Origin: Adineta vaga
Lineage: Eukaryota > Animalia > Rotifera
NCBI GenBank assembly: GCA_021613535.1
Contig: CP075495.1
Span: 13,020,001 to 13,084,000, forward strand
Length of the DNA stretch: 64,000 nt
Direction: 5' to 3'
Positions 24,806 to 28,818 of the stretch are shown one piece after another. The notes under the pieces were generated by a model. It was not told where the DNA came from. It was given only the letters and a program-made list of their open reading frames with translations, and did not search any database. The translations under genes were made by a program, and so were the position numbers. Position 1 is the stretch's first letter. Each line of letters begins with the position of its first letter.

Positions 24806-27800
24806 TCATGATACTTCAGCATTAAAACGTCGATGAATAGATACGGGAGTTTTTGGTACACCGAAATGTATCGATAAACCAAGTAAATCATCTTGATGTG
24901 TCCGAATTAAACATGGTTCAGATTGTGAACGTTGTAAACGTGGAAATACGCATTCAAATTTGGAAAGCGTATCATCAATCTAAATTGACAAAGAATTTAT
25001 AGAGATCAACAAAAAAAGAAAAACGAATCATACATCTGGAGCGAAATTCGGTCGTTTTTCTGGATCAAATTCTGTACATAGTCGTATAAGATTAGTTATT
25101 GCTGTTGGTGTATCATCACGACATTGTTCAACTTTTAGTTTCAATCGACCTTTCCCTACTAGCCACATAATCTGATTCAAATGGAGTAGAAATATATATT
25201 TTATAATAAAAACTCTTAAGATCCCCTAACCTGTTCTTTATTGCTTAATGGTGTATGTGGTAATTTTCCACTAAACATTTCAAATAGTACACATCCATAT
25301 GCGTATACATCAGCACTAGTTGAATAACAATTCGGATCTTTTTGTTGAATAACTTCAGGTGCCTAAAATGAGAGAGATAGACAAGAAGAAATACACACAC
25401 ACACAATATGATTTTACCATCCAAAGAACTGAACCAGTCGGTTGAAATTGTTGATTAACACCTTCAGCTAGAACAGTTTTAACCGCTGCTAAACCGAAAT
25501 CACCAATTTTTACGCGCCAAGATACTCCAACTTCTTCCGTTTCTGCACACATATCCAAAAAGACATTACTTGATTTAAGATCACGATGAATTATTCCACG
25601 ATCATGTAAATATCTATGAAAATCATTGATATTTTAATATTCAAGTATTTGAGCATATTTTCTTCAAAACTTACGACATTCCTTGACATAATTGCCGTGC
25701 TATATCAATTAATTGATTAATTTTCCAATGTCGATCAATTATATGAATATGTTTATAAAGTGTTGATCCCTAAGTGAATATGTTTCATGAATTTGAATTT
25801 AATCTACAATCAATTTAATATTTACCTCACACCATTGTGTAACAATGGCAAAACGAGGTGAAAGCATATATCCTAAGAAATTCAAGGTATTTTGATGAGT
25901 GATTTTTCTAAAAATAAACAAACAAAAGAAATATGTTTCTCTTTTCGTCAATATTTAATGAAATCTACTTGAGAGCTATCACTTCATTTCGAAATGCTTG
26001 ATATTGACTCGGTGTTGGTGATATGAAATTTAATTCTTTAAGTGCTACTAAACCTAAACAATAAACAAAAATTTGCTTATTAATTCAACGGAAAACAACA
26101 GAAAAATCTTTTTTAGTTATTCTTACCATGTAATCGGAATTCCGCTTTGTATACACTACCATAAGTACCACGACCCACCATACGACCACGATTGAACAAA
26201 TCTTCAGGTCGAATTTCCCATTCGCTTAGTTTCTATTATAGGAAAAAAAGATTATTATTTACTTTTTCTTTCTGAACAAAAAATCAAAGGAAATTTACAT
26301 GTGAAGATTTTTTAGTATCAGTAGTTCCATCACTCGATGGTCTCGTCATACTGGGTCGAAGTGTTTCTGGACTAGTAATAATTGATCCATTGACAGCTAG
26401 AAATAAATTGATTAGTTTAAGAAGAGATTTTCAAAGAAAACCCTATGTAAGGAAAAAAAGAAGCGAAACTATAAACGAATGTGAAGCGTATGATAATGTG
26501 TAAAGATGATTCAGAAATATCTTACTCAATATTAATGGAGACATGCGATGAATACGCAATGGTAATGATGATGATTGTTGAAAGTGTGAATTTGATGATA
26601 CAGATGAAATACTTTGTAAATCCTGACTAATGTCTTTTTGTGGATCTGTCAAGTAAATATTTAAAATAATCTGATTCATATATTTGTGACATATATGTTT
26701 TTTTATATTTATATGCGAGGCAGGAAAAAACGAATAAATAAATAAATAAATAAATAAATAAAGAATCTATAATATCCCTCAATTGATACCCGAAAAAAAC
26801 CCAGATCGAAGCTAACGAAATATTATCTGATCTACCTACGCCACATACACAAGAACAACCAATGAGACGATTAAAAATAGAATATAGACACACAAAGAGA
26901 AGAGAACATTCAATAGAAGATGAAATTTTCTAGCTTACCAACTGCATGATTTGAATTTAGATCTGGTCTCTATAAAGATAAATCGAAGAATTTCATAAAA
27001 TTTCAATGAAATAATTTCGACATACTGGTAATGGAATCCGTGGTAAACTACGTGATTGTTCCTTATTTCTTGTTTGTGTTATTGTTCGTTCGACATCCAA
27101 TCGATTTGGAATACGATGTTGAATATGACTAGATAGATGAAAACACAAACTTTTGTTTTTTTTTCTTTCTTTCTTTTCAAAAAATCTTCTCTTTTTCTTT
27201 TCTACATAGAATAGTAGACAACACATACTCAATGATCGGTTGAGAACACACCGGTGCTTTGCTACGACAATGATTATGATAATTATTTTTACATAGAATA
27301 CACTGTATATGAGTTTCACGAATACGATGATGACAAACAGCACAACGAACACGAAACATAGTAAAACGAGATGTTGATATCGTTTCCTAGATAGATACAA
27401 CATAGACAAACATTGAAAGCATACGATACGAAAAGCAACATAGTTTGATAACAAAAAAGAATAAGTACCTAAAAAAGATATCTCTCGGTTCAAAACGACA
27501 TATACGAGATTTACGAATGCATCGAGCATGTATACGATGACCGCATACAAGACATCGAAGTCCTTGAAATAACAGTTTATGACATGCGTCACAATAAGTT
27601 AATACAAAAAATGTTTTTCGAATCTAGGAAAAATAAGAGGTATGTTGCCGGTATATTGTTCTTTGTTTTTTTTCTCAGTTGAATCAAATTGATTACATAA
27701 TCAATTATTTACTTACAAATGAATGGTCAAGTTTCGTTTTTTCCTCAAGTTCAATTTCAGTTTCACGTACACGATCAAGTGTTATATCCCATGGACATGG

Positions 27801-28818
27801 TTGTCTGTTAAATCAAAGAGAAACAAAACAGATCAATTGATTATATTCATTTCAATATTACCTTGATATCATATATACAGGTGTATATGCTCTTAAATTT
27901 GTTACAGAATGTCGTAGAGCACGTGATTCAAGTGCAACTTCAAGTGTTTCATCATTACGTGGTGCAAACTAGAAAGATAGAAAGACTTTTAGACAATACG
28001 ATAAAGTTCATTGATATTTAACTTACAGCGGTTGTATGTTTATTCGGAAAATGAACACGTATGAAATTACTTGGTGTCATACTTGGACTACGTGATCGTT
28101 GACTTAGAGAAGTTGTTATTGGTGGTGTTAAAGGAGAATAATGATAAGTTGTTTGTTGTTCATTATTCGATGTTGAATAATCATGAATGAAAATATCTTT
28201 TGCATTAAGTTGATTCGGTGATAAGGATGATTTCGATTGTTGAAAAGGTTTTTCTAATGGTGAATATTGAGATTGATGAGAATATTGACTATTTTCTAAG
28301 GAAACATCATTGATGGATGATGAAGATGGAAATACAGGTGAATGATTTTGATATTCAACTTCATGTAGATATTCAGTTAGACTATCACGTGCTTTCGTTA
28401 AAATATCAATTCGATCAGTTAAACGTTGAAATTCCTTAATTGAAAATAAAAACATTGAAGCTAAGGGTATTATGTTCGTTTCTTTTTTTAAACTTACTTG
28501 CATATAAAATGGTGGTCGAGTTTCACGAAAAGCTAAATTATAATTATTAACATCAGCTGTTAGATGTTTTAACATTTTCATAAGATCATCTAATATTTGT
28601 CGACATTTTTGTGGATCCATATCACGTTTACCTTCTTCAACTTTATCAAATATCATTCGACGGAAACTATCTTCTTGAGTATTTACTGGCGAAGCAGAAC
28701 GTGGTGGGGTTGATGAGGTTGAGGAACAAGATTTATGATGCAGCGGCTTATATGCATCCATTGGAACTGTACTGTTATTGCCGCTTGTCATACGATTTGC
28801 TTGTAGAACCATAGCCAT
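24806..28818 (-). CDS. raf: Raf-family Ser/Thr kinase (BRS-like coiled coil, RBD, C1, kinase); multi-exon
   Basis: PPFYMQEFQRL (BRS-like), FIRVHFPNK (RBD), HSFIRKTFF..CDAC..LFQGLRC (Raf C1), [42 protein letters not shown]-terminal RSQSEP 14-3-3 site. Confidence 0.93.
27229..27386 (-). other. Alternative (mutually exclusive) Raf exon encoding a second C1 zinc finger
   Basis: 158-nt AG/GT-bounded exon, phase 0 to 2 like the neighbouring 155-nt C1 exon (27623-27469); encodes CAVC..CILC..HNHC..C. Confidence 0.8.

What the first reader, a model, noticed from the sequence alone, without database searches (positions are those of the whole stretch)
27128..27730. Raf has two mutually exclusive exons encoding alternative C1 zinc fingers
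Seen: the upstream exon ends ...LDHSF| in phase 0 at 27717 and supplies the first Zn-ligand His. Exon A (27623-27469, 155 nt) encodes the canonical Raf C1: [42 protein letters not shown]. Exon B (27386-27229, 158 nt) encodes a very divergent finger with all seven remaining ligands: [47 protein letters not shown]. Both are phase 0 to 2 and each joins the next exon (27128, xHIQHR) in frame; including both or neither shifts the frame. Known: Raf has a single C1/CRD that contacts Ras, anionic membrane and 14-3-3 in the autoinhibited state; I know of no Raf with switchable CRD exons. Inference: a splice-controlled swap of the Ras/membrane/autoinhibition module giving two differently wired Raf isoforms.
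Basis: partly seen in the sequence, partly recalled or inferred. Interest (0 to 1): 0.85.

Follow-up and report, generated by a model that had tools for sequence, protein, structure and literature searches.

The report
Swappable zinc finger in rotifer Raf
Bdelloid rotifers build the growth-signalling kinase Raf with either of two very different versions of its regulatory zinc finger, chosen by splicing; both versions are made into RNA and kept across the bdelloids examined, an arrangement I found described for no other Raf.

Summary
Observation confirmed. The Adineta vaga Raf gene (I4U23_009818) carries two tandem C1-finger exons, A (27623-27469) and B (27386-27229), both phase 0 to 2. Either alone keeps the frame; both or neither break it. 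The same order and phases occur in 7 genome loci (Adineta, Rotaria, Didymodactylos, both A. vaga paralogs) and 16 held-out environmental loci. Intronless transcript contigs with 97% identical flanks carry A only or B only. A. vaga RNA-like runs show the upstream-to-A joint and a contig matching exactly B. B is predicted to fold as a C1 domain, nearest the RAF1 CRD, but loses the hydrophobic loop-2 residues. The splicing mechanism is a known kind (tandem-duplicated mutually exclusive exons); its use on a Raf CRD was not found in the searchable literature. The functional difference is inferred, untested. The scan noted the same arrangement on another piece of this genome (s1-494428).

The parts
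28498..28818 (-). First coding exon; starts the N-terminal helical region that resembles the BRAF-specific region (resemblance by eye, not tested)
   Evidence: P0035 mapped on the window
28027..28434 (-). Exon 2: linker and start of the RBD
   Evidence: joint 27968/28027 in RNA-like runs
27862..27968 (-). Exon 3: middle of the divergent RBD, with His at the BRAF R188 place
   Evidence: joints
27717..27804 (-). Exon U: end of the RBD and the first zinc-ligand His shared by both fingers; ends in phase 0
   Evidence: joint 27804/27862
27469..27623 (-). Exon A: Raf-like C1 finger, 155 nt, phase 0 to 2
   Evidence: Pfam C1_1 34.7 bits; BRAF CRD E 8e-11 from residue 238; U-A joint in run X1
27387..27468 (-). 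A-B intron, 82 nt, holding the conserved paired GCUU element and a weak in-frame GT at 27452
27433..27436 (-). First GCUU motif (UGCUUU consensus)
27417..27420 (-). Second GCUU motif, 34 nt before the B acceptor
27229..27386 (-). Exon B: divergent C1 finger, 158 nt, phase 0 to 2; the exon used in GenBank model I4U23_009818
   Evidence: contig laid exactly on 27229-27386 in run X10
27026..27128 (-). Exon D: common downstream exon with the CR2-like Ser motif
24809..26396 (-). Nine exons for hinge end, kinase domain and C-terminal 14-3-3-type motif
   Evidence: exon map; most joints listed; motifs

Best explanation
A tandem duplication of the Raf C1 exon, older than the split of Adineta, Rotaria and Didymodactylos and older than the two paralogs in A. 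vaga, left two exons of which one enters each mRNA. SHOWN: both exons are intact, share phases and are each spliced between the same flanking exons; including both or neither shifts the frame. SUPPORTED BY PREDICTION: B folds as a C1 domain that takes its first His from the shared exon. INFERRED: exclusivity is enforced at least partly by frameshift and nonsense-mediated decay, and the choice is steered by a protein that binds the paired GCUU motifs in the A-B intron, most likely Muscleblind, which from that position would favour A and repress B. INFERRED: A keeps the ancestral membrane-inserting and 14-3-3/kinase-facing loops and gives a conventionally autoinhibited Raf; B has a longer loop 1 and a polar, basic loop 2, so it should be less autoinhibited and bind membranes more by charge, or bind another partner. 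Odds: real conserved mutually exclusive pair about 0.93; functionally distinct isoforms about 0.75; this direction of the difference about 0.4; Muscleblind as the regulator about 0.35.
For: Frame tests. Same order and phases in 7 genome loci and 16 held-out loci. Intronless contigs L004 (A only) and L005 (B only) align at 97.6% and 96.7% in the flanks and break at the exon edges; further spliced B forms in L010 and L030 and A forms in P0042 and P0048. In A. vaga runs: an 11-letter loose end at 27623 equals the end of exon U; a contig lies exactly on B with 30 non-intron letters at its 3' side; loose ends match exon B of the paralog. The model of RBD plus B matches the RAF1 CRD best (rmsd about 1.9 over 52 columns, E 0.003) and the top 18 VIA rows are C1-containing chains. 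Loop 2 mean hydropathy is -1.98 in B, -0.06 in A, -0.16 in outgroups. GCUU in 7/7 and then 15/15 A-B introns against 0/11 held-out U-A introns; 13 GCUUU against 1.8 in shuffles, 0 of 1000 reaching it. Muscleblind motif and position rule: PMC4176163; a mutually exclusive precedent: PMC3643581. CRD loop mutations relieve autoinhibition or raise lipid binding: bioRxiv 10.1101/2021.10.01.462773.
Against: The joint table of the single read-laying run was cut, so U-B, A-D and B-D joints of this very gene were not listed, nor could A-B joints be excluded. The runs are contigs whose RNA nature is a guess. Pairwise dN/dS of B is high (0.20 to 1.19), although its synonymous rate is itself low. No biochemical data. 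The structure model is shallow (18 rows, mean pLDDT 55.8; 87-88 only in the finger core) and its matches have modest scores. No conserved RNA duplex. The GCUU pair could instead be part of a branch-point region or a weak hairpin.
Confidence: 0.72

Rival explanations
1. The exons are mutually exclusive and both fold, but the two Raf isoforms are nearly equivalent; B drifts under relaxed selection apart from its zinc ligands.
For: Pairwise dN/dS of B reaches about 1 in some pairs; B is more variable than A (72% against 78% mean identity); the shared RBD is itself degenerate, so CRD contacts may matter less.
Against: Non-ligand residues of B are invariant or nearly so (Ile-Arg in loop 2, Tyr before the His, Lys-x-Pro). 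Both exons and the intron motif are kept in every locus with enough sequence. Synonymous variation in B is lower than in constitutive exons (8/22 against 165/267 columns, p 0.024), which inflates dN/dS.
Confidence: 0.15
2. B is not a loosened CRD but a finger for a new partner (another small GTPase, scaffold or lipid), evolved together with an RBD that no longer binds canonical Ras; the switch changes the input of Raf, not its autoinhibition.
For: RBD substitutions at Q165, R166, K183 and R188 equivalents are fixed in 36/36 bdelloid proteins while the domain stays highly conserved among them. B has its own conserved surface and keeps the Lys-x-Pro of the RAS-facing segment, whose Pro A has lost.
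Against: No partner identified. Arg residues next to the lost positions could compensate. Bdelloid Ras could not be examined.
Confidence: 0.25
3. A and B are also, or mainly, included in tandem through a downstream donor in the A-B intron, giving one full finger and one His-less finger.
For: An in-frame GT exists at 27452 and in all six other genome loci at varied places; three public gene models read A and B in tandem (P0022, P0033, P0034).
Against: Those donors score -8.2 to 2.8 bits against a 5th percentile of 3.9 for real donors, and their position is not conserved. Every transcript-type contig found holds one exon only. The second finger would lack its first His.
Confidence: 0.05
4. B is a decaying, unspliced duplicate.
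For: Only its divergence from canonical Raf fingers (29% mean identity).
Against: Intact in 23 loci, spliced in transcripts, and chosen by most public gene models (26 B-first against 10 A-first proteins).
Confidence: 0.01

Closest known systems
Tandem exon duplication-derived substitutions (homologous mutually exclusive exons; e.g. MAPK8, MAPK14, MEF2D; PMC8373072)
   Same: Adjacent homologous exons of similar length and equal phase, one per mRNA, old and conserved.
   Different: Here the swapped unit is almost a whole regulatory zinc finger of Raf, the two copies are only about 31% identical, and one ligand comes from the shared upstream exon. 'RAF' does not occur in the main text of that human catalogue; its supplementary list was not available.
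Raf-family kinases (BRAF, RAF1, invertebrate Raf) with one CRD
   Same: RBD, C1, Ser-rich hinge, kinase and C-terminal 14-3-3-type motif in the usual order; kinase about 50% identical to annotated invertebrate Rafs; exon A aligns from BRAF residue 238.
   Different: Two alternative C1 exons; shortened spacing before the last Cys; RBD lacking three of four Ras-binding basic residues. The 92 outgroup proteins show one finger (90) or none (2); their genes were not inspected for hidden exons.
Known Raf splice variants: BRAF exons 8b and 9b, DA-Raf1 (PMC3189609, PMC3008692, PMC2064279)
   Same: Splicing tunes Raf autoinhibition or output.
   Different: Those add hinge inserts or remove the kinase domain; none replaces the CRD with another CRD.
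Tpm1 exons 2/3 regulated by MBNL and PTB (PMC3643581)
   Same: Mutually exclusive pair with UGC-type motifs flanking the repressed exon.
   Different: Binding by Muscleblind is shown there; here only the motif pair is seen.
KSR C1 domain
   Same: Six residues before the last Cys and a similar C-terminal stretch (from memory).
   Different: A profile of B finds RAF1 first and no KSR chain up to E 1; KSR ranks 32nd in the fold search. No sign that B came from KSR.

Membership tests
Raf kinase | Kinase domain closest to Raf kinases, with catalytic motifs intact | tested here: met
   Nearest named non-bdelloid hits are Raf, 47-54% identity; Gly loop, Lys, HRD and DFG motifs present
Raf kinase | RBD followed by C1 in CR1 | tested here: met
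   Profile of RBD plus B matches BRAF and RAF1 over positions 9-135; alignment to arthropod Rafs
Raf kinase | Ras-binding basic residues in the RBD (BRAF R158, R166, K183, R188) | tested here: not met
   Only R158 kept; Thr, Ser/Leu and His at the others in 36/36 bdelloid proteins
Raf kinase | Two 14-3-3 sites (CR2 and C-terminal) | tested here: inconclusive
   C-terminal motif is canonical; the CR2 motif has Gln instead of Arg at -3
Raf kinase | Binds Ras-GTP and phosphorylates MEK | not testable with these tools
   Needs an assay
C1 domain (exon B form) | His, six Cys and His zinc ligands in C1 order | tested here: met
   Spacing 16/17, 10 and 6 in 26 proteins; ligands invariant
C1 domain (exon B form) | C1 fold | tested here: met
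   Predicted model matches C1 domains from residue 84/85 to 135, including the shared His; Z up to 7.1, modest scores
C1 domain (exon B form) | Binds zinc and anionic lipid | not testable with these tools
   Needs an assay
Homologous mutually exclusive exons | Adjacent, homologous, same phases, similar length | tested here: met
Homologous mutually exclusive exons | Each exon spliced alone between the same flanks | tested here: met
   L004 and L005; A. vaga partial evidence
Homologous mutually exclusive exons | Joint inclusion absent | tested here: inconclusive
   No tandem transcript contig found, but the joint table was cut and contigs drop rare forms
Homologous mutually exclusive exons | Origin by tandem duplication | tested here: inconclusive
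   Shared phases and shared 6-residue spacing; A+B as one clade not rejected, p-AU 0.595, but B sits on a very long branch
Docking-site/selector RNA-structure control | Conserved intronic base-pairing between segments | tested here: not met
   No consistent duplex or fold z-score in 7 loci
Muscleblind-regulated exon | Clustered YGCY/GCUU motifs beside the exon | tested here: met
Muscleblind-regulated exon | Binding and splicing response to Muscleblind | not testable with these tools
   Needs knock-down or binding assay

The most novel reading that the evidence does not exclude
Bdelloids run a rewired Raf: its RBD no longer reads canonical Ras, and a Muscleblind-type splicing switch chooses between a conventional autoinhibitory finger and a new finger that makes Raf less dependent on Ras or responsive to another input, in particular cell types or states such as desiccation recovery.
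Probability: 0.2. Interest if true: 0.85.

Novelty: new variant of a known kind. Interest (0 to 1): 0.62.

Why it matters
The CRD is the hub of Raf autoinhibition and membrane engagement and holds about 38% of RASopathy mutations in BRAF. A natural pair of Raf proteins identical except for this finger is a ready comparison for separating its lipid, 14-3-3 and RAS roles. Most invertebrates have one Raf gene; bdelloids reach two regulatory types by splicing. Public models usually show only one form, mostly B, which lacks a Pfam C1 or RBD mark in the listings, so the arrangement is hidden in annotations.

Tried and rejected
RNA docking-site control: no conserved duplex among the five segments. 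Steric hindrance: the A-B intron (71-109 nt, 248 in Didymodactylos) is longer than ordinary introns of these genes (mostly 52-75 nt) and no branch point could be placed, so it is neither shown nor excluded. Minor-spliceosome incompatibility: all sites are GT-AG with ordinary scores. KSR origin of B: not supported. The 199-codon open frame at 27592-26993 is not conserved. L030 first looked like B without A; it is a spliced cDNA-type contig. No monogonont, seisonid or acanthocephalan Raf came up in three homologue searches, so the age of the duplication beyond bdelloids is open. Literature searches for Raf or C1 with mutually exclusive exons, and for bdelloid or rotifer Raf, found no description; the library lacks most subscription papers. 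Depth from contigs was not used to rank isoforms.

Full report
Identity. The window is AT-rich, about 30% GC. The gene on the minus strand from 28818 to about 24809 is the Adineta vaga model I4U23_009818 (P0035), which maps on the window in 16 exons. Its kinase domain is nearest to annotated Raf kinases, 47-54% identical, with catalytic motifs intact. A second A. vaga Raf, I4U23_024048 (P0016, locus L003), lies on another chromosome-size contig; I take it for the paralog from the bdelloid genome doubling (inference).

Observation. All coordinates hold. Exon U ends at 27717 in phase 0 after His-Ser-Phe. Exon A (27623-27469, 155 nt) and exon B (27386-27229, 158 nt) both run phase 0 to 2, and exon D starts at 27128. 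A alone or B alone keeps the frame; both, neither or a retained intron give stops. A passes the Pfam C1_1 cut-off and aligns to the BRAF CRD from residue 238. B scores just under the cut-off without its first His; a profile of B fingers finds RAF1 first (E 0.0006). From memory, not tested here, the human BRAF CRD exon also starts at residue 238 in phase 0 and ends in phase 2.

Conservation. A followed by B, with the same phases, is present in all seven genome loci read: the window, the A. vaga paralog, A. ricciae, A. steineri, Rotaria magnacalcarata, R. sordida and Didymodactylos carnosus. As a held-out test I scanned metagenome contigs with an alignment of exon B alone. Fifteen of 18 loci, plus L011, have A before B with lengths 152/155 and 158/161 nt; several are near-copies, so they are fewer than 16 independent cases. 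Two of the remaining loci start inside B, and the third is a spliced cDNA-type contig. The seven ligands never change. Mean identity is 78% among A, 72% among B and 31% between them. Pairwise dN/dS is 0.06-0.81 for A and 0.20-1.19 for B; B also has fewer synonymous changes than constitutive exons (8 of 22 against 165 of 267 columns, p 0.024), so that ratio overstates relaxation.

Splicing. The best evidence comes from two intronless JGI contigs, L004 and L005. They align at 97.6% and 96.7% in the flanks, and the alignment breaks at the exon edges: L004 holds A only, L005 B only. L010 and L030 join U straight to B; P0042 and P0048 come from short contigs with A only. Public R. sordida models give a 777-residue A form and a 778-residue B form from contigs of the same length. 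For A. vaga itself, RNA-like runs hold 0.57-0.67 of the sampled words, where exons with both A and B predict 0.60 and with one 0.51. In three runs of three studies the listed joints match the exon map; run X1 has a loose end at 27623 equal to the end of exon U, and run X10 has a contig laid exactly on 27229-27386 with 30 further letters that are not intron. Loose ends in X8 and X10 match exon B of the paralog. The table of joints was cut to 15 rows and the call cannot be repeated, so the other joints, and the absence of A-B joints, were not seen for this gene. The runs are contigs whose RNA nature is guessed, and depth was not used.

How the choice may be made. Frame is the shown part: double inclusion shifts the frame in every locus and skipping both gives an early stop in all 18 tested; decay of such mRNAs is inferred. 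Downstream in-frame GT sites in the A-B intron score below real donors and are not conserved in place; three public models that read A and B in tandem are best taken as predictor output. No conserved RNA pairing was found. The A-B intron does hold a conserved element: GCUUU occurs 13 times in the seven genome loci against 1.8 in shuffles and ten times more densely than in other introns. In the held-out set GCUU is in 15 of 15 A-B introns and 0 of 11 U-A introns. It is usually a pair 16-21 nt apart, the second copy 25-55 nt before the B acceptor. UGCU and GCUU are Muscleblind motifs, and Muscleblind represses exons from upstream and activates from downstream (PMC4176163), so one site here would favour A and repress B; Tpm1 is a precedent (PMC3643581). 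This is a lead. A weak hairpin or a branch-point element are alternatives.

What B is. A model of RBD plus B (18 rows; mean pLDDT 55.8, 87-88 in the finger core) matches the RAF1 CRD best in Foldseek (E 0.003, rmsd 1.9), and the top 18 rows of the wide search are C1-containing chains, aligned from the shared His onward. Scores are modest. A and B share six residues before the last Cys where all 90 outgroup fingers have seven, which fits a duplication within the lineage. The tree has B on a very long branch and does not reject A+B as one clade, but does not show it. A keeps the ancestral loop 1 and loop 2 residues, including the BRAF Q257 place. B adds 4-5 residues after the His, puts Arg at the F247 place, and has a polar, basic loop 2 (hydropathy -1.98 against -0.06); it keeps the Lys-x-Pro near the end, whose Pro A has lost. 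These loops insert into membranes, and mutations in them relieve autoinhibition or raise phosphatidylserine binding in BRAF (bioRxiv 10.1101/2021.10.01.462773). I infer that B gives a less autoinhibited, more charge-driven Raf. The residue mapping is uncertain because of the insertions.

The RBD. The shared RBD is very conserved among bdelloids but has His, Thr, Ser/Leu and His at the places of BRAF Q165, R166, K183 and R188 in 36 of 36 proteins; 68 of 68 outgroups have Gln, Arg, Lys/Arg and Arg. Mutating these residues disrupts RAS binding, and RAF1 R89L almost abolishes it (PMC7895934). Neighbouring Arg residues or a co-changed Ras could compensate; I could not examine bdelloid Ras.

Known and new. 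The splicing type is well known (PMC8373072), and notes of this scan suggest it is common in this genome (unchecked). Known Raf splice variants alter the hinge or drop the kinase. I found no paper on alternative CRD exons in any Raf, within a library that lacks most subscription papers. One first-reader note reports the same arrangement on another piece of this genome; it is probably the paralog that I checked in L003 and is not independent support.

Handling notes. Window exons were searched one by one by reference; a search with a joined model of my own making was left out, and whole isoforms were used only as stored database proteins.

Verdict. A real, old and expressed mutually exclusive swap of the Raf C1 finger; a new variant of a known kind; function of the swap inferred. 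Interest 0.62.

Noticed in passing
window 27862-28060 (RBD exons): The RBD of all 36 bdelloid Raf proteins lacks three of four canonical Ras-binding basic residues yet is nearly invariant among bdelloids; none is listed with Pfam RBD.
   Followed up: partly
window 27050-27064 (exon D): The CR2 14-3-3-type motif has Gln (Ser or Pro in some Rotaria) at -3 instead of Arg, so the inhibitory site may be weak; the C-terminal motif is canonical.
   Followed up: no
window 26397-26938: The hinge intron holds an open exon-like stretch near 26646-26526 that is skipped in the main joint of three runs, has contigs in run X8, and is included in some orthologous models (P0003 against P0010): a likely cassette exon, like BRAF 8b/9b in position.
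   Followed up: no
window 28102-28383: A joint skipping 280 nt inside exon 2 appears in three runs; probably a contig of the paralog whose middle does not align. Not resolved.
   Followed up: no
window 26993-27592: A 199-codon open frame in another phase crosses A, B and both introns into exon D; it is not conserved in other loci.
   Followed up: yes
window 27313-27410 and 27472-27621: Run X5 (another organism label) has one short contig identical to part of B and its upstream intron, and one with 11 differences in 150 letters over A. Single low-depth records.
   Followed up: no
window 25520-25560: About ten extra acidic residues lie between the HRD and DFG motifs of the kinase domain in bdelloid Rafs.
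   Followed up: no
L002 (Didymodactylos, P0043): The public model fuses Raf to a DnaJ domain, probably a merge of two genes.
   Followed up: no
L030 1154-1250: A cDNA-type contig joins U to B but retains the B-D intron.
   Followed up: partly
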